Source: Macrostomum lignano | Taxonomy: Eukaryota | Assembly (NCBI GenBank): GCA_002269645.1 | Contig: NIVC01001816.1 | Coordinates: 62,001-126,000, forward strand | DNA length: 64,000 nucleotides | Direction: 5' to 3' | Part shown: piece after piece, positions 1 through 58,417 of the stretch | Position numbering within the stretch: the first letter of the stretch is position 1 | How the letters are laid out: each line of letters opens with the position of its first letter | Program-made: the position numbers and the translations under genes | Notes under the pieces: generated by a model | Told to the model about the DNA's origin: nothing | Seen by the model: the letters and a program-made list of their open reading frames with translations, nothing else | Databases searched by the model: none

Positions 1-2686
1 TCCAGCTGGCTGAGAGTTCGAAAAAGCGACGATTCGAACGATTTCTGACTTGGCTGATCGGGTCTGTTGGGATCTGAGCCGAGCAGGGAGCCTCGGTGAT
101 TTGCTAGGGACTCCAGATCGACTACCTGGTAATTGTAAAAAAGGAAGTCAAGTTTTAAATGACCCTTTTCGGGCAGGTTATTTACAGGCAATTCTAGTCT
201 AGTTCTACTAAATCTAGTCAGTTCAAACGGCCCTTTTAAGGCAGGTTAATTACAGACACTTTTAGTCTAGTCTAGTTCTACTAAATCTAGTCGGTTAAAA
301 CGGCCCTTTTAAGGCAGGTTACTTACAGTCACTTCTAGTCTAGTCTAGTTCTACTAAATCTAGTCAGTTAAAACGGCCCTTTTAAGGCAGGTTACCTACA
401 GACACTTTTAGTCTAGTTCTACTAAATCTAGTCAGTTAAAACGGCCCTTTTAAGGCAGGTTACCTACAGACACTTTTAGTCTAGTTCTACTAAATCTAGT
501 CAGTTAAAACGGCCCTTTTAAGGCAGGTTAATTACAGACACTTCTAGTTCTACTGAATCTAGTCAGTTAAAACGGCCCTTTTAAGGCAGGATACTTTTTT
601 TTATTAGAGGCAGGGGGGTTGTGTGCACCCTGGCGCACTTTAAGCGACATGGGCACGCAACCGGCGAGAGGCATTACTGCCCATTCCGCCGACTCCCCTG
701 AGCAGGCACACAAGCGCGCGGATACGTACGCAGGCACACACTCACACAGGAGTGTACAGCGGCCCTAACTTTATATTATCGTTAGGCATGTACACTTCAC
801 TGCGCCTTGGGGGGTTGGCTCTCAAGGCCGTTAATTGCACGAGCAGAGCCAAGCCGAGATTCCAATTTAGCCCCAAATTAATGTGACTGCACTTGGAATC
901 GAGCCTGGGTCGCTGGCACACCAGAGCAGCTGCGCTACCGCTGGGCTACGCCCCCCCTAGGCAGGATACTTACAGACACTTCTAGTTCTACTACATCTAG
1001 TTCAGTTAAAACGGCCCTTTTCAGGCAGGTAATTACAGATTACTAATGTTATGCTCATAAGCAAAAACTTACACCTAAAATGGCTAAAATTAAAACGGCT
1101 CTTTTCGGGCAGCGCTTTAAAAACTAGACGAGATCTACTGTTAACTCTATAAAACAGTATAATTGCATACCTGCTCTCCTTGTCTAGCCAATCGTTCAAG
1201 CAGGTAAGTCTTGCCTGAACCTGTCAGCCCAGCTAAAACCACTGCGCGTTTAAGTCGTCCAACAGGCGGCTCAACACCGGCAAGGTCATTCAGTGACTTC
1301 ACAACGACGCGCCTGTAGGCCCGGTAGCCGCCGGCAAGAACTGTTGGCTGGTAGCCAATCTGGGAAAGCACGATCGCTAGAGAGTGGGAGCGCTGGCCGC
1401 CGCGCCAGCAGTAGATTAAAGGCCTGGCGAGGATTTCAATAATTATGGAGAATTATGAAATTTGCAAGACACCTTGCGACGCATTTTAGGGCACTAAGAT
1501 ATTGGGATGCGAAGATATAATTCTAATAATTTAAGGATTTTTTGCAATGGGAAAAGGGGATTTTGTAGACACATCTACTCCATCTAGTCAGTTTCTAACC
1601 AGGATTCTGGGAAAGGGGATTTTGTAGGATTTCAGGCAAAGGGGATATTGTAGGATTCCAGGCAAAGGGGACTTTGTAGGATTCTAAGTAAAGGGGATTT
1701 TGTAGGATTCTAGGTAAAAGGGGATTTTGTGGGATTCTAAGAAATGGGGATTTTGTAGGATTCTACAAAAAATGGGGATTTTGTAGGATCCTAGAAAAAT
1801 TGGGATTTGTGGGATTCTAGGAAATGGGGATTTTTGTAGAATTCTAAGAAATGGGGATTTTGTAGGATTCTAAGAAAAAGGATTTTGTAGGATTCTAGGA
1901 AATAAGGATTTTGTAGGATTCTAGGAAATAAGGATTTTGTAGGATTCTAGGAAATAAGGATTTTGTAGGATTCTAGGAAATAAGGATTTTGTAGGATTCT
2001 AGGAAATAAGGATTTCGTAGGATTCTAGGAAATAAGGATTTTGTAGGATTCTAGGAAATAAGGATTTTGTAGGATTCTAGGAAATAAGGATTTCGTAGGA
2101 TTCTAGGAAATAAGGATTTTGTAGGATTCTAGGAAATAAGGATTTTGTAGGATTCTAGGAAACAAGGATTTTGTAGGATTCTAGGAAATAAGGATTATGT
2201 AGGATTCTAGGAAATAAGGATTTTGCAGGATTCTAGGAAATAAGGATTTTGTATGATTCTAGGACTCTAGACTCACCTAAAATCGACACTCTTATCAGCA
2301 AAGTGAGTGCCCAGCAGTTCACCAATTCTCTGACTAATCACAGAGGCTCCCAAGCGTCGCCCATCAAACGGCGATCGGGCGAATGTTTTACCAATCGCTG
2401 CTCGATCCCCGTCGCCTAATAGCGGCAGATTAACAGCTCCGGGCAGGTGATCGTCTGCAAATTCTGACGGAGTTCGAACGTCAATCACTTCGTCATAGGC
2501 TGCCCAATTCAATGGGTTGGGTTCTGTTTGAATCGAACTGTTGTTATTGTTATGCTTGATGTTGTAGCTAAATGTGCTGCACCTGTTTAACTGGTAGCGG
2601 CTGAACACGCGACACACCGTCGCTAAGGCCGCGGTGGTGACACGGCAGCGACCGAACTGCAACCAAGCCAGTGACAGGTTATGCAT
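1..2686 (-). CDS. selU: tRNA 2-selenouridine synthase (SelU/MnmH/YbbB family), rhodanese + P-loop, with N-terminal transit-peptide-like extension; 3' part runs off the left edge
   Basis: Exons 2686-2277, 1423-1171 and 125-<1, all GT-AG with matching phases (2, 0). Spliced protein has IDVRTPSEFADDHLPGAVNLPLL, LIYCWRGGQRS (rhodanese Cys motif), GGYRAYRR, Walker A GLTGSGKT and VVDLESLANHRGSLLG...QPSQKSFE, in the order I recall for E. coli SelU. First ~50 aa are Arg/Ser/Thr-rich with no acidic residues. The ORF-track start at 2698 is TTG; first ATG is at 2686. Confidence 0.92.
200..590. repeat. Tandem minisatellite, ~59-70 bp unit (GGCCCTTTTAAGGCAGGTTACCTACAGACACTTTTAGTCTAGTTCTACTAAATCTAGTCAGTTAAAAC), SelU intron 2
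   Basis: About 6 copies read directly; degenerate copies continue after the SINE at ~960-1140. Confidence 0.9.
596..958 (-). mobile_element. tRNA-derived SINE (family A), full length, with 12-bp TSD
   Basis: The reverse complement begins GGGGGGGCGTAGCCCAGCGGTAGCG (A box) and contains GGCTCGATTCC (B box). It ends in an A-rich tail. AGGCAGGATACT flanks it at 584-595 and 959-970. Near-identical to the copy at 18914-19275. Confidence 0.9.
1545..2265. repeat. Tandem repeat, ~26-bp unit GGATTTTGTAGGATTCTAGGAAATAA, filling SelU intron 1
   Basis: Read directly; homogeneous near the donor (1880-2265) and degenerate toward the acceptor. Confidence 0.9.
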
Positions 2687-2769
2687 GATAATATTCAAGG
2701 TACGTTTTTGATAATTAGGGCGATTTAAAAAATCTTTACAAAATTCCAGGAGGCTCTTAGAGCGATTGG

Positions 2770-3650
2770 ATTCTGGGGCGATTCTAAGGGAGGTTCCGGG
2801 GCGATTCTAAGGGAGGTTCCGGGGCGATTCTAAGGGGAGATTCTGGGGCGATTCTAAGGAGGATTCTGGGCGATTCTAAGGAGGATTCTGGGGCGATTCT
2901 AAGGGGGATTCTGTGGCGATTCTAAGGGGGATTCCAGGGCGATTCTAAGGGAGATTTCGGGGCGATTCTAAGGGGGATTCTGGGGCGATTCTAAGGGAGG
3001 TTCTGGGGCGATTCTAAGGGAGGTTCCGGGGCGATTCAAAGTGGGATTCTGGGGCGATTTTAAGGGGGATTCCGGGGCGATTCTAAGGGGGATTCTGGGG
3101 CGATTCTAAGGGAGATTCTGGGGCGATTCAAAGTGGGATTCTGGGGCGATTCTAAGGAGGATTCCGGGGCGATTCTAAGGGGGATTCTGGGGCGATTCTA
3201 AGGGGGATTCTGGGGCGATTCTAAGGGAGGTTCTGGGGCGATTCTGGGGCGATTCTAAGTGGGATTCTAGGGCGATTCTAAGGGGGATTCCGGGGCGATT
3301 CTAAGGGGATTCTGGGGCGATTCTAAGGGGGATTCTGGGGCGATTCTAAGTGGGATTCTGGGGCGATTCTAAGGGAGGTTCTGGGCGATTCTAAGGGAGG
3401 TTCTGGGGCGATTCTAAGGGGGATTCCGGGGCGATTCTAAGGGGGATTATGGAGCGATTCTAAGGGAGGTTCTGGGGCGATTTTAAGTGGTATTCTGGGG
3501 CGATTCTAAGGGAGGTTCTGGGGCGATTCAAAGAGGAATTCTGGGGCGATTCTAAATGGGATTCTGGGGCGATTTAAAGGGCAATTCTGGGGCGATTCTA
3601 AAATGGAGATTCTGGGGCGGTTTTAAGGGAGATTATGGGGCGATTTTAAG
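2770..3650. repeat. G-rich tandem repeat, ~21-bp unit GGGGCGATTCTAAGGGAGATTC, between the YIPF1 stop and the SelU start
   Basis: About 40 degenerate copies read directly. Confidence 0.9.
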
Positions 3651-4328
3651 GAAGTTTTTTAAGTCGTTTTAGCAGAGATACTTCACGATGACAATATCTA
3701 TTTACAGTAAATTGGCAAGCTATTCAACAAAAACATTAAACAAACAAAAAAAGTTAAACAATTCTAGAAGCAGTGTATTTATATGAATGGCATTTGATCA
3801 AAGCAGTACTTGACTCCCTCAAAACTAAATCTACTAAAATCAGAACTGTATACAGTTTACATTTCAAAACTGAATAAATTGTCATAGGGAATGCATTTGA
3901 CACCGTTACAATCGTTACAATTTACTGTATTACAAGCGTTACACACTACTGAAGATATAGTAGATAGTCTTACTTACAATTTTACAAAAAAATCGATATA
4001 AACCGACACCAATAGCCAAATAAAAATATCAAACGAGTCATAAACGGTACAAGTCGCCCCAGAGTCACCAGTGAGTTGTTTGCAATGACTCTTTCGCAAT
4101 TCTTGTTAGGGTAAGGTTTTCAACCGGACAGCCAAAGCAAAACAAATTACACATTGTATATCATCTTTTATACCTTGGTAATGGTTTACCTTCAAGAAAT
4201 TTTAAATTCAAAACGTTACATTTCCAATGGTGTCTACACTAGTCTATATTTAACCATGTGTTCCAATAATTAGATGTATAGCAGAAACATTAATGGGGTC
4301 GAGCATTTACAGACTACAGCTTTTTTAT

Positions 4329-4509
4329 TCAACCGCTTGGGGTCTTGCGAGTTGTCGCGGCTGCCCGAGTGGTTGCCGAGGTTCTGCCGGAATAAGCTGG
4401 CGTCGCGGGCGAACTGGCTGACCCGCCACCGCCGCTTGTGACGTGGAAGAAATACAGCTGAAATGTATTGTTGCTAACTGCTGGAATACTGCTGTTGGCA
4501 GACAGACAC

Positions 4510-4564
<55 letters not shown>

Positions 4565-4645
4565 CACAGACAGATAGACAGACAGACAGACAGGCAGACA
4601 GACACACAGACAGACAGACAGACAGACAGACAGGCAGACAGACAC

Positions 4646-4676
<31 letters not shown>

Positions 4677-4683
4677 CACAGAC

Positions 4684-4720
<37 letters not shown>

Positions 4721-4721
4721 C

Positions 4722-4764
<43 letters not shown>

Positions 4765-4805
4765 CACAGACAGATAGACAGACAGACAGACAGGCAGACA
4801 GACAC

Positions 4806-4840
<35 letters not shown>

Positions 4841-4847
4841 CACAGAC

Positions 4848-4896
<49 letters not shown>

Positions 4897-4963
4897 CACA
4901 GACAGACACACAGACAGACACACAGACAGACACACAGACAGACACACAGATAGACACACAGAC

Positions 4964-5036
<73 letters not shown>

Positions 5037-5067
5037 CACAGACAGATAGACAGACAGATAGACAGAC

Positions 5068-5108
<41 letters not shown>

Positions 5109-5109
5109 C

Positions 5110-5148
<39 letters not shown>

Positions 5149-5750
5149 CACAGAGCCCTCACCTTGAAGCCAACAGCCAGGGCAGCGTGCAGCAGCATGG
5201 CGGCAGTCAACAATCCCACAGCTGTCCGCCGCTCCCCAGAGGACACGCTGGGCCACAGCGAGAGGGCCAGCACAGTGCCGGACAGGGCCATGGCCAGCAG
5301 TATCAGCGCCCACTGCACAGCGGCCAGCTGTATAACGCACAGCACGGACACGGGGATGTAGATTGACAGGGAATAGCCGTACAGACACAGCAGCTCCAGG
5401 TAGGCATACTTCTCTGGCACCTGGCGCCACCAGGTGACCGCCCACAGCAGCAGCGGCACCAGCCACCAGTACAGATAAATTGCCGTGGCGGCGAATGTCA
5501 CCTTGCGAAAATCGTAAACCCACACGTAGTTGCCGCCGGCTGCTGATGTTTGGAAATAATCCGCCAGATTGCCGGCTATGGCGGTGACGAACACCAGGGT
5601 GGTGCACACCCAGAACGGGCCGTAAAGGTCCGGCGAGTGACGGATATCGTCAGATACTAGATTGCGGTTGGGTCTGGGCACGAAGGAGCTGAGGATGCGC
5701 TTGCCCACCTGGGAATGGATAGATAGATGCATAGATAGATAGATAGATAC

Positions 5751-5784
<34 letters not shown>

Positions 5785-5806
5785 GGATAGATAGATAGAT
5801 AGATCA

Positions 5807-5868
<62 letters not shown>

Positions 5869-5870
5869 CA

Positions 5871-5901
<31 letters not shown>

Positions 5902-5966
5902 CATAGATAGATATATAGATACATAGATAGATAGATAGATAGATACATAGATAGATATATAGATAC

Positions 5967-6008
<42 letters not shown>

Positions 6009-6009
6009 G

Positions 6010-6053
<44 letters not shown>

Positions 6054-6178
6054 CATAGATAGATAGATAGATAGATGGATAGATATATAGGTACATAGAT
6101 AGATATATAGATAGATAGATAGATAGATGGATAGATAGATAGATAGATATATAGATACATAGATAGATAGATAGATAC

Positions 6179-6216
<38 letters not shown>

Positions 6217-6217
6217 G

Positions 6218-6269
<52 letters not shown>

Positions 6270-6270
6270 C

Positions 6271-6304
<34 letters not shown>

Positions 6305-6413
6305 GGATAGATAGATACATAGATAGATATATAGATACATAGATAGATAGATAGATAGATACATAGATAGATATATAGATACATAGATAGATAGATAGAT
6401 AGATAGATAGATG

Positions 6414-6453
<40 letters not shown>

Positions 6454-6574
6454 CATAGATAGATAGATAGATGGATAGATATATAGGTACATAGATAGAT
6501 ATATAGATAGATAGATAGATAGATGGATAGATAGATAGATAGATATATAGATACATAGATAGATAGATAGATAC

Positions 6575-6628
<54 letters not shown>

Positions 6629-6629
6629 G

Positions 6630-6681
<52 letters not shown>

Positions 6682-6818
6682 CATAGATAGATAGATAGAT
6701 AGATGGATAGATAGATAGATATATAGATACATAGATAGATATATAGATAGATAGATAGATAGATGGATAGATAGATACATAGATAGATATATAGATACAT
6801 AGATAGATAGATAGATAC

Positions 6819-6876
<58 letters not shown>

Positions 6877-6877
6877 G

Positions 6878-6933
<56 letters not shown>

Positions 6934-7050
6934 CATAGATAGATAGATAGATGGATAGATAGATAGATAGATATATAGATACATAGATAGATATATAGAT
7001 AGATAGATAGATAGATGGATAGATAGATACATAGATAGATATATAGATAC

Positions 7051-7092
<42 letters not shown>

Positions 7093-7093
7093 G

Positions 7094-7137
<44 letters not shown>

Positions 7138-7149
7138 CATAGATAGATG

Positions 7150-7189
<40 letters not shown>

Positions 7190-7326
7190 TATAGATACAT
7201 AGATAGATAGATAGATACATAGATAGATAGATAGATGGATAGATAGATAGATAGATAGATAGATACATAGATAGATATATAAATACATAGATAGATAGAT
7301 AGATAGATAGACAGATAGATGGATAG

Positions 7327-7357
<31 letters not shown>

Positions 7358-7378
7358 CATAGATAGATATATAGATAC

Positions 7379-7420
<42 letters not shown>

Positions 7421-7421
7421 G

Positions 7422-7453
<32 letters not shown>

Positions 7454-7490
7454 CATAGATAGATAGATACATAGATAGATATATAGATAC

Positions 7491-7553
<63 letters not shown>

Positions 7554-7605
7554 CATTGATAGATAGATAGATACATAGATAGATAGATAGATAGATAGAT
7601 AGATG

Positions 7606-7637
<32 letters not shown>

Positions 7638-7675
7638 CATAGATAGATAGATACATAGATAGATAGATAGCTAGC

Positions 7676-7706
<31 letters not shown>

Positions 7707-7734
7707 ATAGATAGATTAATAGATAAATAAATAA

Positions 7735-7818
<84 letters not shown>

Positions 7819-7819
7819 G

Positions 7820-7865
<46 letters not shown>

Positions 7866-8310
7866 AATAGGTAGGCAGATAGGCAGACAAGTAGTTTTAT
7901 AAACACGCTAAGCAACCCACCTGGTTGGTATCCACATCAAAGAACTGTTGATAATAGGCCATAGACAGCACGCTGGGCTTTTTAGCTGCTTCTTCAGTGG
8001 TTTCGCCATCTTCTCCATCAGCTCCGCCATCTCTGATCAGCTTGGCCCTGTCTCCAGCGGTGCTACCCGGTCTGTCATAATGCACATCGTCATCTTCGTC
8101 TCCATCATCGAGGCCCACAGAGGTGTCCCTAGCTGGGAATTCTTTGTGCGGACTGTTTAAGTCCACTTTGGTGTATTCCACGTCTAAAGGAGAAATTGAG
8201 GGCAGAAATATAATCTTGAAATAATTAACTAATTTGCGATTGCTCTTTTAACGATAGTAAAGGTTAGAAAAAAACTAATCATTTAACTCACCTTTAAAAC
8301 TTCTAGCCAT
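4329..8310 (-). CDS. YIPF1: Yip1-domain Golgi membrane protein, YIPF1/YIPF2 orthologue (~318 aa)
   Basis: Exons 8310-8292, 8183-7921, 5708-5163 and 4457-4329 sum to 957 nt with consistent phases. Motifs [51 protein letters not shown] and AVGFKLYFF are typical of YIPF1/2. Confidence 0.93.
4500..5150. repeat. (GACA)n microsatellite forming nearly all of YIPF1 intron 3 (4458-5162)
   Basis: Read directly; starts ~12 nt after the donor. Confidence 0.97.
5716..7885. repeat. (GATA)n microsatellite, ~2.2 kb, forming nearly all of YIPF1 intron 2 (5709-7920)
   Basis: Read directly; GATA/GATG/TACA variants; abuts the acceptor. Confidence 0.97.
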
Positions 8311-17409: not shown

Positions 17410-20400
17410 GCTGGACATCAATCTATTCTACTCATTTTCAATGCTTCACACCCGCAGCCGTCATCTGTGACTACTCAGCAGCAGCCGCTGCCGCCTCCCC
17501 TTCAACTGTTTGTGGTCGGCGCTAGTGGAGGCTCTGACGCTGCGTCCCTTCAGCTGCAGCAGCGACATCAACAGCAGCAGCATCTTCAGTTCACCTGGCA
17601 ACAGGATTTCGGTAGCGGTATTGTCTATAGCCTTACCGAACTCTTGCCAATACCGTTGCCATGCGGAATCGCAGTAGACGATCTGGTTCCGGTTCTGTCT
17701 AACCGGCACCAGCTGCCGGAGTTCACCCGGCCTCAATTGCATCAGTCGCTAACAGAATTTGTTGTTAAAAGTACGGCCAATTATTTTGATAAGATTTGCG
17801 AACAAAGGCGCGCTGCCGTTGGCGCCGTGGGCTTGGGCGGCGCCGCGGATTTAAACAACTGCGCTGAGCAGCTCTGTAGGGAGTTCCGGCTTGTTAAGGT
17901 AAATAGGGCTCTTAGTGATTAATTAGTTCTTGGAGTACTCAGTCAGACTGGTTATGATCTATTCTATCCTCTATTATATCCTTACCTGCATTCTATCCTC
18001 CATTATATCCTTACCTGCATTCTATATCCTCTATTATATCCTTACCTGCATTCCATTCCCCAATTTATTCTATGTGCACCCTGGTGCACTTTAAACGACA
18101 TTGTCGCACAACCGGCGAGAGGCCTTACTGCCCATTCCGCCGACTCCCCTGAGCAGGCACACAAGCGCGCGGATACGTACGCAGTCACACGCGCAGGCAC
18201 ACACTCACACAGGAGTGTACAGCGGGCCTAACTTTATTTATCGTTAGGCATGTACACTTCACTGCGCCTTTGGGGTTGTTGGCCTCAAACTGGTCGTTAA
18301 TTGCACAAGCAGGGCGAAGCCGAGATTCCAGTTTAGCCCATAGATTAATGCGACTGCTTTTGGAATCGAGCCTGGGCCCCTGGACTCCCTTCAACACCAC
18401 AACCCGCACCCTCTCGCAGACCTATTCAACCCTGGTGCAAACTGCCGGTGTCCAAGCCGACCACGACGAGCCTGACTGCGGCGACTCCGCATCGGTGCTG
18501 TCGTCCTCGTTGGCGTCGAACTCCTCGCCGTCGCACAACACGGCTAACAGCTTCGATTCGGTCAGCGGATGCGGCGGCAGCGCCGGCTCCGATGTTGAAC
18601 GTTCAGAATTTCGTCGAGCCTATTTGCAATTGGTGAATTGTGCACCCAGCAAAGCTGCTAAACTGGTCAAGATTGAACGGGCTATGGCTAAACAGGTTGA
18701 AGATCTGCTGTCCAGCGCTGGCAGGGCTATGCGAGAGTTGTCAGCTAAACAGCAGGCTGTGATGGAGGAGGCGGTGGCTCAGAGTGGCCACAGATACACC
18801 GGTGAGAGCTGAGCTTTATTTAGTGTGTTTTATAGGTTGTCTCTCGAGCAATCTTCCCTAGAGCATATTCCCTAGATCTACTAATAAAATCCATTTATCC
18901 ATCCATCCATCAAGGGGGGCCGTAGCCCAGCGGTAGCGCAGCTGCTCTAGTGTGCCAGCGACCCAGGCTCGATTCCAAGTGCAGTCACATTAATTTGGGG
19001 CTGAATTGGAATCTCGGCTTGGCTCTGCTCGTGCAATTAACGGCCTTGAGAGCCAACCCCCCAAGGCGCAGTGAAGTGTACATGCCTAACGATAATATAA
19101 AGTTAGGGCCGCTGTACACTCCTGTGTGAGTGTGTGCCTGCGTACGTATCCGCGCGCTTGTTTGCCTGCTCAGGGGAGTCGGCGGAATGGGCAGTAATGC
19201 CTCTCGCCGGTTGTGTGCCTATGTCGCTTAAAGTGCGCCAGGGTGCACACAACCCCCCTGCCTCTAAAAAAAAAAATCCATCCATCAACCTATGCTATAC
19301 ATGGCTTGTCTAATCAACTGACTGTACACTCGGCAACAGTCAAAAGTTCCACCCTCCAGGCGAGATGAACATTGTCTTAATTATTGTGACAACTTCTGGC
19401 TCACAATTCAACCCTCAAATTGCGCAACAAAGCCGCCGCGAGGAAAGGAAAGTTAATTGAATCAATAATAAACGTCAGTCCCACAAAATCATAACAGTTT
19501 TTATGCAATATTCAGTTAGAATCGCGATACTTAATAACGCGCGTGGGATCCCCTCGCACACAGGGGAAGCTGCTGCCAAGCCTTTTCAAGGGCATGAAGC
19601 AGCTCCGCAACATTCTGCTGTGGTGGATTTTCGTTTCGAAAGCAGAATTTTAGAAAGTCCCAGACATGCTCGATGAAAAAAATTCATCGATCGCTTGGAG
19701 GGTGGAACTTTTGTCTGTTGCTGAGTCATGCTGCTATGTCAATATGTGATTGATTTCAGAAGAACAGCTCAACCGATTTTCTTGAAAATTGCACCATTCG
19801 ATCAGATATTTTCCCGTGACAGTACGTGCTGTGGCTAAGAAATTGCTCTATCCCAAAAGGATTAAATATTCGGAAAAAAACATGCTTTTTGCAAAGGTAA
19901 AGCAGACTTTTCGACTTGAAATGTGTTTTGACCATTGTAGAGCAAATACTGAAAGACTGAACTCTGATTCTGATAAAGATTGCATCACAACAGCCTTTTA
20001 TTTATCGTCGCTTTACTGGCTTGGCTGAATCGTGACACCGATTTTAATTGAGTCACAGTGTGGAAAAAAGTATGGAAGCATAGCACATGACTTGGTTTAG
20101 ATTGCGTAACTACGTTTAATGGAGACTGATACTTGCTGACTGACTGACTGACTGAGAAATCGATTATATAACTCAACGAAAAAGAATAAAAAGCGCCATT
20201 TCAGCCTCGTGTCAACAAAAAAGAAGCGTCATGTCAAAATAAAAGCAGCGTGTTTAACCTAGGTTCAGTTTCATTCATCGTATTTGAGCGATATTGAGAT
20301 CCGGTTGTGCAACTCAAATAAGAAATCTACATGCAGCAGCAACTTTACTTGTGACAGTTTGCATCTGGCATCAGGTTGAGGCGACATGCAAAAATCTATC

Positions 20401-26288: not shown

Positions 26289-29200
26289 ATGCACATGCAA
26301 AAAACTAAGGATAACATTTATCAATCTGTTTGTATTTCATGCATGTCTCTTCAACGAGTGACAGCTCTAACGATGGGCAGCCGCCATGTGTCGCTTCTCA
26401 GATCGACAATTCGACTGGCCTCATTTTTGCTATCTACTTCTCAGCGGCAGCATTTTTATCATTGCCTGTCTAGACCGCTGAATCTGTGTTCTCAACTAAC
26501 TACTCGACCGCTGGTTTCAGTAGTAGCCAGTTGCTATAGTAATAATAATAATAGTAACAGTACCAGGGTGGCTACAGACGGTGAGAAGCAGATTGAGTCG
26601 GCTTTGCGAACAGCTTTTCCCGGGACGCGTTCTGTCACGGTAGAGGATGTCAGTGGGGGCTGCGGTCAGATGTATCAGGTGGGTTATGCCCTGTGTTTTT
26701 AAAAATAAATTTCACTTTGTTGAAATTCGTTCAAGTTGTGGGCTAACGCAAATGTTTGAAGACAGGGGCCGTGTGCACCGTGCACGTTAAGCGATATTGT
26801 TGCACAACCGGCGAGAGGCATTACTGCCCATTCCGCCGACTCCTCTGAGCAGGCACACACTCACAGGAGTGTACAGCGGCCCTAACTATATTCATCGTTA
26901 GGCATGTACACTTCACTGTGCCTTGGGGGTTGGCCCTCAAGCTGGGCGTTAATTGCACGAGCAGAGCCAAGCCGAGATTACAATATGTAGCCTTAAATTA
27001 ATGTGACTGCACTTGGAATCGAGCCTGGGCCGCTGGCACACCAGAGCGCCGCGCCAGACTACTGGGCTACGGCTCTCCTTGCTAGCGGAAGTAACTAGCA
27101 AAACTTCGACTTGAACTTTGACACGTGAAATTTCTAGCCAACGAATGCACTAGCCGCTAACCCATATCATACTTAGCAATATCAGAAGTGACAGTCGATT
27201 TTCAAAAAACTATAGCTAAATTAAAAAAACTGCATTCAGTCCATTCCGGCAAGTGTTTTTCGTGGGCTACCATTTGCTGGATCCATATTTATCCAATCAG
27301 AATATGGCGTATCTCTGTGCTAGAATATCTGAGTATATTAGAGTGGAAATAGATCCCAGGACACTGGGCCAAACAGACGAGTTTTGAATTTCTTAGCTAC
27401 CGTCAACACGAACAACTATAAGCGGCATGCTGTCCAGATCTACATTTAAATATGCTGTGCTGCTCTATTACATAATCGTTGCCCAATACGCGTTGTGCAA
27501 TCAACAATGTCGCTTAAGCTACTCCTTCAAGGAGATCGATGGTTTTCTGTGCATTCGCCGTAAGTTCGTCCGCACCATCGACACCTGCACCAATCATGCC
27601 GGCTGCTCAATGCTGTGCGCCAGAGACCGGCGCTGTCAGGCGTTCAGCCTGGCTGACGGTCCGTGCCAGCTGTTCGTGTTCGACAAGTGCAGCAAGTCGG
27701 TGAGGGACTGCGGCTGCTCCAGGAGAGGTCGGGTGTTTGTGAAGCAGCAGCCGGGACTCGAGGCGGGCGCGCTGTGTCCGTCTGGCTACGGAGACGACCT
27801 GTGCGGAGTGAAGTACAAGCTGCACTCTTCCAAACTGATGGATTGGATGAAGAGTAGGCAGTTGTGCGAATCTGAAAGCGGTCTGGTAATTATGACCGAC
27901 GTAATGAATATCGCGGAAATGAATCATGTCGATTTATTGCACGAAAATTACAGCGTCGGAAGGTCATTCTGGTTGGGCGGTTGGCAGATTCCTGACAGTC
28001 CTGAGCCCGCAGGTGGCTGGATCTGGGTGTCCTGCAATATCGCTTTGAATAGCGCGCTGTGGGCTGCTGGCGAGCCAAACAATAATTTGTGGGTCGAGAA
28101 TTCGGTCTGTAGATACAAATCCAGTACCATGTTAAACGACTGCGGTGGAGCAGCAAAGCTGTCGGTTCTGTGTGAATGCGTATCTCCGTTTGATTGAGCA
28201 AGCCTGCAACTGACCTTAATTGACGAGATGGTGTTTACTGTTACCTGCGATAAAATAGTTCGCTGTCCTCTTACCTCTATATTAGTACATTCTTTAATTG
28301 GAATATTAAAGAGTCTCTTACTCTATTGTCGTGGAATTATCAGGTGTAAACTCGACGAAAACGCATCTGGTTTAAAGAACAGATCCGTCACTCAAAATTT
28401 GTTTATTCAGGCAACGCCCTTAGCCAAGCCTATAATATTATATTGACAGTCAACACCTGAATGAGAAATTGCTTTCAAAGAGGCTTGCAACAAAGTGCTA
28501 GTCTCTTTATTTCTGCTGGAAAGTTTTTTCTTTATTTTCCCAAACTGCATTACAAGTAGCTGGTGGCTACGTTGTTTGGGCGTAAAAGTTTTTTGGTAAT
28601 ACAAAACTCGGTTACAAGGACTAGGTTGAAATTTCATAGCATCGAAAACTTTTAGCAAGACTTCATAAGGTCGAAATTTCACTACGTAGAAAACTACTGC
28701 ATGTTCTTGTTATATTAAGTTTTTTGACGTTGTAAAATTTCGACTTTGTGAAAGCACCCCTATTTTGTTACACAGTCAGCTAAGGATGATAAAATTAGAT
28801 TCATGAAACCAATGAGTCGAGCTGTGCCATTCTTATTATTTTAGGCACAGTATACATGCACGATCGACGTAGGATATAGGATTAATATATATAGAATTTT
28901 AATTTTCTAAACGAAAGTCTTAATGAACATCAATAGAGTCGTAAGAAAGGCAAGATATACACTCAGCAACAGTCAAAACCGCCACCCTACCGAGAGAGGC
29001 GACTTCTCTCTCACCTCAACTGCAAGTGACGTAACTTGCGCCACGGTGTGATGCAGTGTACAGTGTCAGTGTCTTTCGACCAGCGACTTTTTAATGTTGT
29101 TGACTATTATATATCCAATCAATAATAGTTTTTAATATCATTTCAACTTGGGACTAAAATTGCCTCAATAGTTTGGTAGCTAGCTACTTGGTTGCAAATT

Positions 29201-32222: not shown

Positions 32223-45689
<13,467 letters not shown>

Positions 45690-48051: not shown

Positions 48052-51000
48052 TCAATCAGTAGACGGCAGTTCCATGGTTGGTGGCGGGTTAATCCGCATC
48101 TGCCATCGCTCGAAGGCGATACGGAGCAGCTTGCCAAGACTGACCTCCAACAGCTTGGCCCCAACCAAGCCAGCAGACACCCAGATTGTTATTCCAATTA
48201 TTAACGGCTGGAAAGTCTCGGTACACCAGGTGCGCAGGTGACGCAGAGCGTCCGCTTCCGGCGGCAGCGGATCCAAGCACTTCTCGGCGTCGTGACAAAC
48301 TTCAAACTCGGCCTCCGGACCGAAACAGTCGACGCTGGGGCCGAGGCAGACTCGACGACGTTTCTTAGTGACGTCACCGAATCGGTGGCTGCAGTGCGGA
48401 CTGCAGGGCGTCCAGGGAGTCCACTGCGACCAGAGACCTTTCAGGTGTTCGCAGCTCTTGCCATGGAAGCCGTGCTCGCACTGGCAGGACGTGTTGCTGC
48501 CGTCCTGGCTCTCAATGCAGCTGCCATAGAGGCAAACTCGCTTTGTGCACAGTGTCTCAGTCTTGTAGCAGTTGCTATAGGGATGATCTCTGCTAGGCAG
48601 GTAGCCGGGGCTGCATTTGCATCTGTACAGGCTGGTGCCAATCTCTGGCACGCATTCGTTGCCAGTGAAACCAGTGACGCGACATGCTTCATTGCCAGTC
48701 ACAAGTTCCGGATGGTGCGATCTGAGAGTGTGGTTGTTGAATTCGGTTGATACTAGTTTTTATGAATCTTGCAGTAAGATATTTAGCGAGTATAATGAAC
48801 TCTGCAAATCTTAAATCTGGTTTGCAAGCCACTAGACAAACAGACACAAGTGCCTCATTGAAACACTCCCATGTTTGTCAAAGTTTTTTATTTATATTTT
48901 ATTGATACACTTTGGAGTGTCTGTAAAAGTACCTCACTGACACACACCCCTCGAGTGTTTGTAGTTGTTAAACTGTTTCATTGATACACTTCAGAGTGTC
49001 TGTCAAAGTACCTCACTGACACACACCCCCTCGAGTGTTTGTAGTTGTTTTTAAGTGTTTCATTGATACATTTCAGAGTGTTGGTAAAAGTACCTCAAAG
49101 TACAATTAAAATTGTACTTGTATATTAAAGTGCAGCTGCAAAAGTTAGGGGTAAGTGTAAAGAGTCTCTGCTATGAGTCGAAATACGTTTAATAGATTTC
49201 GTCATAGCTTGACTCGCCTGTTAATGCACGCATTGTTTCTCGCCCGGCATCTTCGGCCCATAAAACTGCTGTGACAGACGCACGTGACCTGTCCTGAGGT
49301 GACATTAAACTTGCAGGCCGAAGTGCCCATCTTGCTGCAGAACATGTCGCCCCTGCACAGGTCCATCGGTTTGCACTGGCCGATGTTGCGATCGAACTGG
49401 AAATTATGCCGGCACTTGCACTCGTAGTCGGTCTGCAGGAAGCCGAGAACAACGCAACTACCTGTGGCAAAGTTTTTTCTGGCGCACGGATTTCCGAGAC
49501 ACGGATTGGGACAGATGTAGCGCTGCTGTCGAAATGCTTCAGTCGATGCGTTGAGCAGCAACTCTGAGCAATTGGCCAATGAATTTCTAAACTCAGCATA
49601 TGATTAGCACTGAACCCGACTTGGGTAGTATAATTCGTTCAATTGAGACTATGAACAAGCCTACAGACGTCAATAATGTCAAGAGGAAATACATTCTGCG
49701 ACAGCTGAAAATATCCTGCCTATTTTCAAGGGCTACAGCTCCTGTACATGTACCACATCCCGTCTGTACAATAGACACGGTAGCTTCAATGGCTTTAGTT
49801 ATTCAACGGCCGAATTTGTCTACATTGGTAAAACATCGGACCAAACACACGCATTAGTTGTCAATGCAATCCCCTTTGGCCCCCTTGAACTCACTTTTGT
49901 AGCGCATACAAAAGTTGTAAATGTATAAAGCCGACAGTGTGTCGATGTCCCGAATCGGATAGCAGCTTTTCTCCTTATAGGGCAGGTAGAATATTGGCCC
50001 GAATGTGTGCGGATTCTCGTATCGTCTGCTGAACCCATCGAACCGGGTGACCATGCCGAGATCCAGCTGAGAATAATAGTCGATGGCGAACGGGTCAAGC
50101 AGGCCCAGGAATCTGTGCCAGGAGCAGCGGGGCTGCTTGATTTCGTTGCAGTTATCCATCAGTTTTTGCCAGTCCATTTGATGCAGCATTGTGTTAAAAG
50201 TGTGAATCTGTGTTGGAGTCAAGACAGGAATTTGACCTTACAATTCTGATTTTCAAAACCCTTTGTTTCTTTTTAATGCAATGTTAATCGACTAGAAGTT
50301 TAAGAAATTTAAAGTTTAAGCAATACGGAATCCGAGAAACGATCTGAAGTTCAACCCACCTGAAATTCTAATTACCTGAGGTTCATTGGGTCAACCAAGT
50401 TCGTTCAGTTCACCCGAAATTTCAGGTGGTTAGAGTGTCGGACTCGTGACTAAAAGGTCGGTGGTTCGATTCTCAAACCACTCGGAAAAATTTGTGGTCC
50501 TTGAGCAAAGACACTTAACTTTGCATTGCTTCAGTTCACCCAGCTGTAAAAAGAATGCCAGCATTAGCTGCTGTAATTGAGGGTGTGTGTGTTGACCCCC
50601 CAGTCCTTGGACTGAACAGCCGTACGCAGCCTTCAAATAGCTGCGGCAGTGCATTCTTTACGTTTGTCAAAGGCATCACTCAATACAGACTTTACCTGAA
50701 ACAACTCGTTGCAATTGTTGGCATCGCGAAGCACCCTACAGGCTTTTTGCTGCCTAGGATTTTTCGTACGGTCCTCAACGCAGAAAGTGCCTTGAAGTCG
50801 AACCCACCAGAACAAAACTGGCAGGGCTCCGCTGGCGTAGGCATTTCCAGGAAACCCGGACTCCATTGATTTCACAATTGGATTAGTCATCAGGTTGAAA
50901 GTTCTCAAACCGAGCATCCGATAAGAATTGGTGCCTCTGGGCCGGATTAGGCCAGCGTTCCGGTCGCGTATTCGCATCAGTTCCAACTCGCCAATCAGAT

Positions 51001-52027: not shown

Positions 52028-56947
<4,920 letters not shown>

Positions 56948-57575: not shown

Positions 57576-58417
57576 GGACTGTGTGCACCCTGGTGCAGCT
57601 CAAGCGATATCGAGAGGCATTACTGCCCATTCCGCCGACTCCCCTGAGCAGGCACACAAGCGCGCGGATACGTACGCAGTCATACGCACAGGCACACACT
57701 CACACAGGAGTGTACAGCGGCCCAAACTTTGTTTATCGTTAGACATGTACACTTCACTGTACCTTGAGGTTTGGCTCTCAAGGCCGTTAATTGCACGAGC
57801 AGAGCCAAGCCGAGATTTCAATTCACCTTCCAATTAATGTGACTGCACTTGGAGACTGGGCTGCTAATGCAGGGGCGTAGCCAGGAATTTTGATTGGGGG
57901 GGGGCCGTGAGTTAGGGGGCGCCAGCTTCTTATAGGGGGGCGCCAGTTTCTTTTAGGGGGGGGGCGCCAGTTGCTTATAGGGGGGGCGCCAGCTTCTTAT
58001 AGGGGGGCGCCAGTTTCTTTTAGGGGGGGGGGCGCCAGTTGCTTATAGGGGGGGCGCCAGTTTCTTTTAGGGGGGGCGCCAGTTTCTTTTAGGGGGGGGG
58101 GCGCCAGTTTCTTTTAGCGGGGGGCGCCAGTTTCTTTTAGCGGGGGGGGGGGCGCCAGTTTCTTTTAGCGGGGGGGCGCCAGTTTCTTTTAGGGGGGGGG
58201 GCGCCAGTTTCTTTTAGGGGGGGCGCCAGTTTTTTAGGGGGGGCGCCAGTTTCTTATAGGGGGGGGGGGCGCCAGTTTCTTTTAGGGGGGGGGGGCGCCA
58301 AGGCCAGAGTTGGTTGATTGGGGCGGGCCACGGCCCCCCTTGCCCCCCCTCTGGCTACGCCCCTGTGCTGATGGCCTATATGAGCGCCTTGCTTGACCAC
58401 CGGGCTACCCCCCCCCT
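57576..58417 (-). mobile_element. SINE family A variant interrupted by a hAT-type MITE
   Basis: Body at 57576-57855; the tRNA-like head (reverse complement GGGGGGTAGCCCGGTGGTC) resumes after the MITE at 58374-58417. Confidence 0.7.
57870..58365. mobile_element. hAT-type MITE (496 bp) with internal G-run tandem repeats
   Basis: Perfect 15-bp TIR CAGGGGCGTAGCCAG / CTGGCTACGCCCCTG. The 8-bp TSD is TGCTAATG (57862-57869) and TGCTGATG (58366-58373), with one mismatch. Confidence 0.88.

What the first reader, a model, noticed from the sequence alone, without database searches (positions are those of the whole stretch)
1..2686. Spliced, apparently mitochondrion-targeted SelU/MnmH in an animal: possible selenium or geranyl wobble modification of mt-tRNAs
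Seen: a three-exon (in window) GT-AG gene encoding an intact-looking rhodanese + Walker A protein with all SelU hallmark motifs. It has a ~50-aa acid-free, Arg-rich N-terminal extension and sits next to ordinary metazoan genes, with host SINE and satellite insertions in its introns, so bacterial contamination is unlikely. Established: bacterial SelU/MnmH converts (c)mnm5s2U34 in tRNA-Lys/Glu/Gln to the S-geranyl form and then to 2-selenouridine using selenophosphate from SelD. Animal mt-tRNA-Lys/Glu/Gln carry the xm5s2U34 substrate (MTO1/GTPBP3/MTU1). I know of no such enzyme in vertebrates. Inference: this animal may make Se2U or geranyl-S2U in mitochondrial tRNAs, which would need selenophosphate supply in the matrix. 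The gene may be an old horizontal acquisition or a patchily retained ancestral gene.
Basis: partly seen in the sequence, partly recalled or inferred. Interest (0 to 1): 0.85.

Follow-up and report, generated by a model that had tools for sequence, protein, structure and literature searches.

The report
Selenouridine synthase gene in a flatworm
The flatworm Macrostomum lignano carries an intact, spliced, transcribed nuclear gene for SelU/MnmH, the otherwise bacterial enzyme that puts selenium (or a geranyl group) on the wobble base of tRNAs, and its added N-terminal leader looks like a mitochondrial import signal, so an animal may modify its mitochondrial tRNAs this way.

Summary
The window is Macrostomum lignano contig NIVC01001816.1. 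On the minus strand lies a SelU/MnmH gene with three coding exons and GT-AG introns. Exon 3 runs off the window edge and is intact to its stop codon in the same contig, giving a 425-aa protein. The full protein passes three NCBIfam MnmH equivalog cut-offs (382 bits against 266). It keeps every invariant SelU residue, including the selenation cysteine, the Walker A lysine and the Gly67 equivalent.

Contamination is excluded. Three homeologous loci each hold the gene between Yip1 and a MYST acetyltransferase. Intron positions are identical and dN/dS is 0.16-0.37. A host interspersed repeat sits in one intron, and the gene models are RNA-seq based.

The 54-residue acid-free, Arg-rich leader has an amphipathic helix and an RVF|S cleavage motif. 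That fits mitochondrial import but is unproven.

No other animal relative appeared among 1.84 billion cluster representatives, where the nearest hit is 45-52% identical. Unstudied homologues with leaders do exist in algae and a choanoflagellate. The donor is unresolved. I found no paper on a eukaryotic SelU.

Verdict: new member of a known enzyme family in an unexpected host. Its function in mitochondria is inferred.

The parts
2277..2686 (-). Coding exon 1 of the SelU/MnmH gene (codons 1-137; ATG at 2686-2684). It encodes the leader and most of the rhodanese domain.
   Evidence: Translation and splice donor AG|GTGAGT. tblastn of the full protein. ATG conserved in all three homeologues. The upstream frame holds no in-frame ATG before a stop and carries a 1-nt indel between copies.
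2507..2686 (-). N-terminal extension (codons 1-60), absent from bacterial SelU. Putative mitochondrial presequence.
   Evidence: Alignment A1 shows bacterial proteins starting at about residue 55-60. Residues 1-54 are acid-free, with 5 R and 1 K. Helical hydrophobic moment is 0.53-0.70. R-3 motif RVF|S at residues 26-29. The AlphaFold2 model gives a low-confidence N-terminus with a single helix.
1424..2276 (-). Intron 1 (853 nt, GT-AG, phase 2), mostly a 26-bp satellite (1601-2264).
   Evidence: The position is identical in the three homeologues while the length differs (853, 1432 and 1884 nt).
1171..1423 (-). Coding exon 2 (codons 137-221). It holds the rhodanese active-site loop and the Walker A motif.
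1408..1410 (-). Codon for Cys142 in YCWRGGQRS, aligned with E. coli SelU Cys97, the residue required for selenation.
   Evidence: Alignment A1 and residue mapping. Role of Cys97 from PMC4830565.
1207..1230 (-). Walker A / P-loop GLTGSGKT (Gly202-Thr209). Lys208 aligns with E. coli Lys155, which is required for geranylation.
   Evidence: PMC4830565.
126..1170 (-). Intron 2 (1045 nt, GT-AG, phase 0), holding a 68-bp satellite (163-596) and a SINE-like insertion.
596..962 (-). 367-bp interspersed repeat with an A-rich tail and, by eye, tRNA-like A/B boxes, inserted in intron 2 of this copy only.
   Evidence: blastn finds five further matches in the window (for example 18913-19275 at 98%). There is no match inside intron 2 of L001 or L004. 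ARAGORN and Rfam give no tRNA call.
1..125 (-). First 125 nt of coding exon 3 (codons 222-262). The exon continues for 490 more nt beyond the window to the stop codon, giving 425 aa in total.
   Evidence: The window is 100% identical to L002. Full exon at L002 12529-13143.
2687..3651 (.). 5' flank. About 80 nt of unique sequence, then a 23-bp-unit satellite (2768-3651) between the SelU gene and the upstream Yip1 gene.

Best explanation
The locus is a functional nuclear gene of Macrostomum lignano (gene cluster Mlig025034, three homeologous copies). It encodes a bona fide tRNA 2-selenouridine synthase / geranyltransferase (SelU = MnmH = YbbB).

The gene probably entered this lineage by horizontal transfer from a bacterium or an alga. 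It has since gained two spliceosomal introns, host-like base composition and a roughly 55-residue N-terminal leader.

The leader most likely directs the protein into mitochondria, the only flatworm compartment whose tRNAs carry bacterial-type xm5s2U34. There the P-loop domain would bind geranyl pyrophosphate and geranylate the 2-thio group of wobble U34 in mt-tRNA-Glu and mt-tRNA-Gln (and mt-tRNA-Lys only if it has a UUU anticodon). The rhodanese Cys142 would then use selenophosphate, made by the flatworm's SPS2, to replace the S-geranyl group with selenium, giving xm5se2U.

Shown here: gene integrity, family membership, host integration, purifying selection and transcription-based annotation. 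Inferred: mitochondrial import, the tRNA substrates, in vivo selenation and the selenophosphate supply.
For: Identity:
- The full protein scores 382.2 bits on NF008752 (cut-off 266), 307.3 on TIGR03167 (cut-off 219.75) and 279.6 on NF008750 (cut-off 241).
- All invariant columns of the 10-sequence and 70-sequence SelU alignments are kept.
- E. coli Gly67, Cys97 and Lys155 align with Gly113, Cys142 and Lys208. Their roles are described in PMC4830565.
- The AlphaFold2 model has pLDDT 86.7 and pTM 0.81, with a rhodanese domain followed by an NMP-kinase-like P-loop domain. Foldseek hits the rhodanese N-domain of a putative ATP/GTP-binding protein from C. difficile (3g5j) and, more weakly (rank 48, E = 0.01), the prenyl-PP-using tRNA enzyme MiaA.

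Real host gene:
- The window equals M. lignano contig NIVC01001816.1.
- Three loci carry the same Yip1-SelU-MYST order and the same two intron positions, all GT-AG, all intact at 425 aa, with dN/dS 0.16-0.37.
- CDS GC is 53% and GC3 is 55%, within the range of neighbouring host ORFs. RSCU correlation is r = 0.64.
- A host repeat lies in intron 2.
- The genome annotation is built only from RNA-seq and transcript evidence (PMC5730564).

Targeting:
- The single Met of the whole protein is M1, so the leader must be translated.
- Residues 1-54 are acid-free (P about 1e-3 given the mature composition), with 5 R and 1 K, an amphipathic helix and an RVF|S motif.
- Independent eukaryotic SelU homologues also carry presequence-like leaders.

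Selenium donor: flatworms have one SPS2 gene (Mariotti 2015).
Against: - No localisation predictor or experiment was available. The leader could serve another purpose, or be shortened if the mRNA is SL trans-spliced at the CAG at 2659-2657.
- Selenophosphate synthetase is not known to be mitochondrial, and no matrix selenophosphate supply is known.
- The three copies are too similar (dS 0.03-0.05; 8-11 nonsynonymous and 8-16 synonymous differences) for dN/dS to be strong evidence.
- I did not verify that M. lignano has SPS2, MTU1, MTO1 or GTPBP3, nor the anticodons of its mt-tRNAs.
- No other animal is known to have the enzyme, so there is no comparative support within Metazoa.
Confidence: 0.5

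Rival explanations
1. The enzyme is active but works in the cytosol on cytosolic tRNA-Lys(UUU), Glu(UUC) and Gln(UUG), converting mcm5s2U34 to mcm5se2U next to cytosolic SPS2. The leader is not an import signal.
For: Selenophosphate is made in the cytosol, and flatworms have SPS2. A review lists mnm5se2U under Eukarya from older reports (PMC7694415). Mitochondrial import was not tested. The leader is low-confidence and mostly unstructured in the model.
Against: The leader has the composition, amphipathic helix and cleavage motif of a presequence and no other recognisable function. Leaders recur on independent eukaryotic SelU homologues, which points to organelles. The family's characterised substrates are bacterial-type (c)mnm5s2U.
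Confidence: 0.2
2. The protein is organellar but selenium-independent. It only geranylates s2U34, or acts as another rhodanese-type sulfur/persulfide transferase, because no selenophosphate reaches the matrix.
For: Geranylation needs only the Walker A motif and geranyl-PP, not Cys97 (PMC4830565). No mitochondrial selenophosphate source is known.
Against: Cys142 and the whole CxRGGxRS loop, which are needed for selenation but not for geranylation, are conserved on a branch that is otherwise only about 45-57% identical to its relatives.
Confidence: 0.15
3. The gene is a transcribed but functionally neutral relic of horizontal transfer, on its way to decay.
For: It has been seen in only one animal species. 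The copies are young duplicates, so purifying selection is weakly measured.
Against: All three copies are intact. Nonsynonymous change lags synonymous change in every pair. All family-invariant residues survive on a long branch that also gained introns and a leader. Exons are about 98% identical between copies against 93-94% for the flanks.
Confidence: 0.08
4. The sequence is bacterial or food-alga contamination, or a chimeric assembly.
For: The closest named relatives are bacterial.
Against: It has spliceosomal GT-AG introns filled with host satellites and a host repeat. It lies in three separate 194-286-kb contigs between Yip1 and a MYST acetyltransferase. Its composition is host-like.
Confidence: 0.01

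Closest known systems
Bacterial tRNA 2-selenouridine synthase SelU / MnmH / YbbB (E. coli b0503; NCBIfam TIGR03167, NF008752)
   Same: It has the same two-domain architecture: a rhodanese domain with the family-specific insertion, then a P-loop domain. Catalytic Cys, Walker A and all invariant motifs are kept. It scores above three equivalog cut-offs and is 30% identical to the E. coli enzyme (alignment A1). Across bacterial relatives identity ranges from 35-52% (full-length matches) to 49-58% (conserved 262-aa query).
   Different: It is encoded in an animal nucleus and interrupted by two spliceosomal introns. It carries a roughly 55-residue basic leader and a small insertion (GVEPPVGRLKRA) before the P-loop. 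It is present as three homeologues. Its partner SelD would be a eukaryotic SPS2.
Uncharacterised eukaryotic SelU homologues: Diaphanoeca grandis EP00040_P043869, Aureoumbra lagunensis A0A7S3NPK4, Diacronema lutheri A0A7R9UTZ0, Cymbomonas CYMTET_56972, and environmental eukaryote-like proteins P0008/P0126/P0127
   Same: The four scanned here (the M. lignano protein, D. grandis P0301, P0126 and Aureoumbra P0277) pass the MnmH equivalog cut-offs. The N-termini inspected carry long leaders that resemble organelle-targeting peptides. None has a described function.
   Different: They come from protists and algae, where a plastid or mitochondrial role is expected. They are only 37-52% identical to the flatworm protein. 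Grouping with the P0008 clade has 64% NJ bootstrap in one data set and is lost in others. D. grandis falls in a different, algal clade.
Archaeal bipartite SelU (TIGR04568 + TIGR04569)
   Same: Same chemistry and domain content.
   Different: It is split into two genes and matches only weakly (52 and 30 bits against cut-offs of 200 and 180). The flatworm gene is of the single-chain bacterial type.
Mitochondrial 2-thiouridylase MTU1/TRMU with MTO1 and GTPBP3 (the animal pathway that makes xm5s2U34)
   Same: It would act on the same wobble nucleotide of the same mt-tRNAs. It is nuclear-encoded and carries a presequence.
   Different: It belongs to an unrelated protein family. SelU would act one step later, exchanging sulfur for selenium or adding a geranyl group. 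No such step is known in animal mitochondria.

Membership tests
SelU/MnmH tRNA 2-selenouridine synthase | Whole-protein HMM score above the curated equivalog cut-off | tested here: met
   382.2 against 266 (NF008752), 307.3 against 219.75 (TIGR03167) and 279.6 against 241 (NF008750) for the 425-aa protein. The 262 aa inside the window alone fall 3-7 bits short, only because they are truncated.
SelU/MnmH tRNA 2-selenouridine synthase | N-terminal rhodanese domain with the catalytic Cys in a C-x-R-G-G-x-R-S loop (E. coli Cys97, essential for selenation) | tested here: met
   Cys142 in YCWRGGQRS aligns with Cys97. The column is invariant in 10 and in 70 sequences. Pfam Rhodanese scores 40.7 bits.
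SelU/MnmH tRNA 2-selenouridine synthase | Family-specific insertion of about 33-36 residues in the rhodanese domain, including the Gly67 position that controls geranylation | tested here: met
   The region aligns apart from single-residue gaps. Gly113 aligns with E. coli Gly67 in an invariant column. The feature is defined in PMC4830565.
SelU/MnmH tRNA 2-selenouridine synthase | C-terminal P-loop domain with Walker A G-x4-GKT (E. coli Lys155) | tested here: met
   GLTGSGKT, with Lys208 aligned to Lys155. The precomputed Pfam hit is PF26341 AAA_SelU. The model shows an NMP-kinase-like fold.
SelU/MnmH tRNA 2-selenouridine synthase | Co-occurrence with a selenophosphate synthetase (SelD/SPS2) in the same genome | not tested
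   The literature states that flatworms have a single SPS2 (Mariotti 2015). I did not look for the M. lignano gene.
SelU/MnmH tRNA 2-selenouridine synthase | Catalysis: geranylation and selenation of (c)mnm5s2U34 in tRNA | not testable with these tools
   It needs an enzyme assay, complementation or nucleoside mass spectrometry.
Nuclear-encoded mitochondrial matrix proteins with a cleavable presequence | N-terminal extension relative to bacterial homologues, free of acidic residues and rich in Arg, Ser, Thr, Ala and Leu | tested here: met
   The extension is about 55-60 residues. Residues 1-54 have 0 D/E, 5 R, 1 K and 11 S/T.
Nuclear-encoded mitochondrial matrix proteins with a cleavable presequence | Amphipathic helix and an MPP cleavage motif | tested here: inconclusive
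   The hydrophobic moment is 0.53 (18-mer) and 0.70 (11-mer). An R-3 motif RVF|S lies at residues 26-29. The model predicts a helix at residues 18-31 of the full protein. These are home-made heuristics. No trained predictor (TargetP, MitoFates) was available.
Nuclear-encoded mitochondrial matrix proteins with a cleavable presequence | Demonstrated mitochondrial localisation and import | not testable with these tools
   It needs a GFP fusion or cell fractionation.
Horizontally acquired gene in an animal genome | Physical linkage to host genes, host-type introns and absence from other animals | tested here: met
   Linkage and introns. The flatworm protein is alone in its 50% cluster, and no animal sequence was recognised among the hits whose source could be named.
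Horizontally acquired gene in an animal genome | Phylogeny nesting the gene inside a specific donor clade | tested here: inconclusive
   NJ trees give a sister group of eukaryote-like P0008/P0126/P0127 at 64% bootstrap. With other taxon sets or distances the partner changes to unnamed environmental sequences. The protein is roughly equidistant from all named phyla, at about 46-57%. No maximum-likelihood software was available.

The most novel reading that the evidence does not exclude
An animal uses selenium, or an S-geranyl group, at the wobble position of its mitochondrial tRNAs. This would make M. lignano the first metazoan with a genetically defined seleno-tRNA pathway. It would imply an unknown route delivering selenophosphate (or selenide plus an SPS isoform) into the mitochondrial matrix. 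It would also add a selenium-dependent layer to mitochondrial decoding of Glu and Gln codons.
Probability: 0.35. Interest if true: 0.8.

Novelty: new member of a known kind. Interest (0 to 1): 0.6.

Why it matters
SelU-type selenation of tRNA is treated in the literature as a prokaryotic trait. A recent review still lists a selenouridine under Eukarya, yet no paper I found assigns a eukaryotic enzyme to it.

This is an intact, selected, transcribed SelU in a genetically tractable animal. M. lignano has transgenesis and a published genome; RNAi is, from my own knowledge, also available. That gives a concrete gene with which to ask three questions:
- Do any animals make seleno-tRNA or geranyl-tRNA?
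- In which compartment?
- How does selenophosphate get there?

The locus is also a clean example of a bacterial-type gene domesticated in an animal, with gained introns, a leader, ameliorated composition and three homeologues. It also points to a wider, unstudied set of organelle-type SelU genes in algae and a choanoflagellate.

Tried and rejected
- Contamination or mis-assembly: rejected.
- More exons, or a broken 3' end beyond the window: rejected. tblastn shows exactly three coding exons and an intact stop in all three copies.
- An upstream start or further 5' coding exon: no in-frame ATG before an upstream stop, and a 1-nt indel between copies upstream of the ATG. An SL-supplied ATG remains possible.
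- A solved SelU structure for comparison: none full-length in the PDB.
- Donor identification: three NJ analyses with two distance measures disagree. Pairwise identities are flat. Left unresolved.
- Other animal orthologues: not seen in two word-index searches, one exhaustive HMMER search, or a search seeded with the choanoflagellate protein. Most hits are unnamed, so absence is not proven.
- Literature on eukaryotic SelU, on Mlig025034, and on the mt genetic code of M. lignano: nothing found.
- tRNA or Rfam identity of the intronic SINE-like repeat: no hit.
Full report
**What is in the sequence.** Reading the minus strand of window 1-2700 gives three open segments joined by canonical splice sites.
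- Exon 1 is 2686..2277. It starts at ATG 2686-2684 and ends AG|GTGAGT.
- Exon 2 is 1423..1171, bounded by CGCCAG|G and CAG|GTATGC.
- Exon 3 starts at 125 after ACCAG| and runs off the window edge.

The 262 residues encoded in the window match NCBIfam MnmH models at 263 bits, and Pfam Rhodanese.

**Which organism and which gene.** A protein search returned a 100%-identical 420-aa entry. Its cluster members are Macrostomum lignano proteins: PAA88412.1 and PAA77333.1, BOX15_Mlig025034g2/g3, and UniProt A0A1I8IY82 and A0A1I8FYH4. They are named only 'hypothetical' or 'Rhodanese domain-containing protein'. The window is 100% identical to contig NIVC01001816.1 of assembly GCA_002269645.1 (locus L002).

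**The gene is complete.** In that contig exon 3 continues for 615 nt in all to a stop codon. The gene therefore has exactly three coding exons and encodes 425 aa. The full protein scores 382.2 bits on NF008752 (cut-off 266), 307.3 on TIGR03167 (cut-off 219.75) and 279.6 on NF008750 (cut-off 241).

**Catalytic residues.** Aligned with E. coli SelU (b0503) and bacterial homologues, the flatworm protein keeps every invariant column. E. coli Gly67, Cys97 and Lys155 correspond to Gly113, Cys142 and Lys208. According to PMC4830565:
- Cys97 is indispensable for selenation.
- The Walker A lysine is indispensable for geranylation.
- The Gly67 region tunes the balance between the two activities.

**Predicted structure.** An AlphaFold2 model built on 70 sequences is confident (pLDDT 86.7, pTM 0.81) from about residue 50 onward. 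It shows a rhodanese domain followed by an NMP-kinase-like P-loop domain. The best structural match is 3g5j, the N-terminal rhodanese domain of a putative ATP/GTP-binding protein from C. difficile. The prenyl-pyrophosphate-using tRNA enzyme MiaA is among the weaker matches.

**It is a host gene, not contamination.**
- The assembly holds three homeologous loci (L001, L002, L004) on contigs of 194-286 kb. This fits the known hidden polyploidy of this species (PMC10468722 abstract).
- Each locus has the order Yip1, SelU, MYST histone acetyltransferase on one strand.
- All three SelU copies are intact and have the same two intron positions with GT-AG ends. Their introns differ in length (596-1884 nt).
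- Pairwise dS is 0.026-0.052 and dN is 0.008-0.012, giving dN/dS of 0.16-0.37. The counts are small, with 8-11 nonsynonymous and 8-16 synonymous differences. This is supportive rather than strong.
- The introns are filled with satellites (26-bp and 68-bp units).
- In this copy intron 2 also carries a 367-bp A-tailed interspersed repeat. It has five more matches elsewhere in the window, one at 98% identity.
- CDS composition (GC 53%, GC3 55%) and codon usage (RSCU r = 0.64) lie within the range of neighbouring host ORFs.
- The published annotation of this assembly is derived only from RNA-seq and transcript evidence (PMC5730564). The existence of the gene models therefore implies transcription.

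**The N-terminal leader.** Bacterial homologues begin at flatworm residue 55-60. M1 is the only methionine in the whole 425-aa protein. There is no in-frame ATG between it and an upstream stop, and the copies differ by a 1-nt indel just upstream. The leader must therefore be translated.

Residues 1-54 contain no Asp or Glu. The probability of that is about 1e-3 given the mature part's composition. They hold 5 Arg, 1 Lys and 11 Ser/Thr. There is a stretch with a helical hydrophobic moment of 0.53-0.70, and an R-3 type cleavage motif RVF|S at residues 26-29. The structure model gives one helix there in an otherwise low-confidence tail. These are the classic features of a mitochondrial presequence, but my tests are heuristics, not a trained predictor.

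One caveat concerns the mRNA 5' end. The M. lignano spliced leader ends in ...TTGCATG (PMC8629364). A CAG acceptor-like site at 2659-2657 would place that ATG in frame, giving MFGRCRV.... Two of the deposited partial gene models begin three nucleotides after it. The leader would then be ten residues shorter but of the same character.

**Relatives and origin.**
- Word-index searches and an exhaustive HMMER scan of 1.84 billion cluster representatives found nothing closer than 45-58% identity. The flatworm protein is alone in its 50% cluster.
- Named near hits are bacterial: cyanobacteria, Betaproteobacteria, Verrucomicrobia and a Fimbriiglobus MAG.
- About 30 of the 149 other representatives listed carry N-terminal extensions of 45 to over 250 residues, many presequence-like.
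- Those whose source could be named are eukaryotes: Diaphanoeca grandis (a choanoflagellate, EukProt), Aureoumbra lagunensis, and Diacronema lutheri and Cymbomonas tetramitiformis. One environmental contig has an AATF-Che1 neighbour.
- The three of these homologues that I scanned (D. grandis P0301, P0126 and Aureoumbra P0277) also pass the MnmH cut-offs.

SelU is therefore present, and unstudied, in several protist lineages. The flatworm is the only animal seen.

Neighbour-joining trees place the flatworm protein next to an environmental eukaryote-like clade (P0008/P0126/P0127) with 64% bootstrap in a near-neighbour data set. With broader sampling or a different distance measure the partner changes. 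Pairwise identities to all groups are flat. D. grandis belongs to a different, algal clade, so vertical holozoan inheritance gets no support.

I conclude that acquisition by horizontal transfer into the Macrostomum lineage is most likely, roughly 80% against 15% for patchy ancestral retention. The donor, bacterial or algal, is unresolved. The worm is, from my own knowledge, fed diatoms in culture.

**How it most likely works.** The mechanism follows from the family's established chemistry (PMC4830565; PMC7694415). The P-loop domain binds geranyl pyrophosphate and, per those papers, probably the tRNA. The enzyme geranylates the 2-thio group of xm5s2U34. The rhodanese cysteine then mediates replacement of the S-geranyl group by selenium from selenophosphate.

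Flatworms are reported to have one SPS2 (Mariotti 2015). In an animal, the tRNAs with bacterial-type xm5s2U are mitochondrial. That, together with the leader, makes mitochondria the most likely site.

From general knowledge (NCBI translation table 9, not verified here for this species), rhabditophoran mitochondria read AAA as Asn. mt-tRNA-Lys should then have a CUU anticodon, so Glu and Gln tRNAs are the likelier substrates.

The unexplained step is how selenophosphate would reach the matrix. Because of this I keep two live rivals: cytosolic action on mcm5s2U tRNAs, and a selenium-independent (geranylation-only) role.

**Comparison with what is known, and novelty.** By every sequence-level criterion the protein is a member of the SelU/MnmH family of the single-chain bacterial type. 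It is not the archaeal split type, which scores only 52 and 30 bits. What is new is the host and the setting:
- an animal nuclear genome;
- spliceosomal introns;
- an organelle-type leader;
- three homeologues.

Nine literature searches found no paper describing a eukaryotic SelU, this gene, or selenouridine in flatworms. Comparative-genomic papers treat ybbB as a prokaryotic marker. I classify the finding as a new member of a known kind. The gene is real, however, and the hypothesis is directly testable in a tractable model.

Noticed in passing
L013 3122-3124, and the same position in L014-L018 (planctomycete-type metagenomic and MAG contigs, off-window): The many exactly 207-aa 'SelU' hits (Fimbriiglobus MAG and others) are not truncated. 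In three distinct loci the SelU frame has a conserved in-frame TGA at codon 208 and continues in the same frame to a full ~357-aa SelU. Gene callers split it into 207 aa plus 140-177 aa. It could be selenocysteine, read-through or a true two-piece enzyme. The column is Ser or Gln, not Cys, in other SelUs, and the downstream hairpin is not significant (z = -0.78).
   Followed up: partly
window 2657-2659 (minus strand): A CAG acceptor-like site lies ten codons into the ORF. The M. lignano spliced leader ends in ATG, which would be in frame here (MFGRCRV...). Two deposited partial gene models start 3 nt downstream. Possible SL trans-splicing that supplies the start codon.
   Followed up: partly
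window 1-8310 and L001/L002/L004: Yip1, SelU and a MYST acetyltransferase lie on the same strand, 0.9-2.8 kb apart, in all three homeologous loci. M. lignano has many SL-resolved operons, so the three genes might be co-transcribed.
   Followed up: no
window 596-962, 18913-19275, 18073-18383, 26765-27079, 57580-57853 (weak partial match at 53114-53268): A roughly 365-bp interspersed repeat family with an A-rich tail and, by eye, tRNA-like A/B boxes. Copies are 79-98% identical. The copy in SelU intron 2 is absent from the other two homeologues, so it is a recent insertion. ARAGORN and Rfam give no hit.
   Followed up: partly
window 4325-7915, 33900-35900, 37879-38946, 40933-41776, 54196-55285: Kilobase-long arrays of short tandem repeats, mostly of a few-base unit, that read as artefactual 200-700-aa ORFs in several frames (repeating SVCL, SIYL, SV/TD and poly-Tyr or poly-Leu). 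They include a tract of about 1 kb that reads as poly-Tyr or poly-Leu. Some lie inside the Yip1 gene's introns.
   Followed up: no
P0271, P0313, P0285 (environmental, eukaryote-like, off-window): A subgroup of SelU-like proteins, two of the three (P0271, P0313) with leaders, has altered signature motifs: YCARGGLRS/YCARGGMRS, Walker A GLTGT(R/K)KT, and HYD(L/K)RY instead of HYDPxY. They may be a functionally diverged eukaryotic branch.
   Followed up: no
window 27427-28197 (+), 44853-45668 (-), 48052-48702 (-): Long single-exon ORFs that by eye look like ordinary animal genes: a C-type-lectin-like protein, a MATH/TRAF-like protein, and an EGF/thrombospondin-type cysteine-rich protein with a transmembrane tail. 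Not scanned against domain libraries.
   Followed up: no
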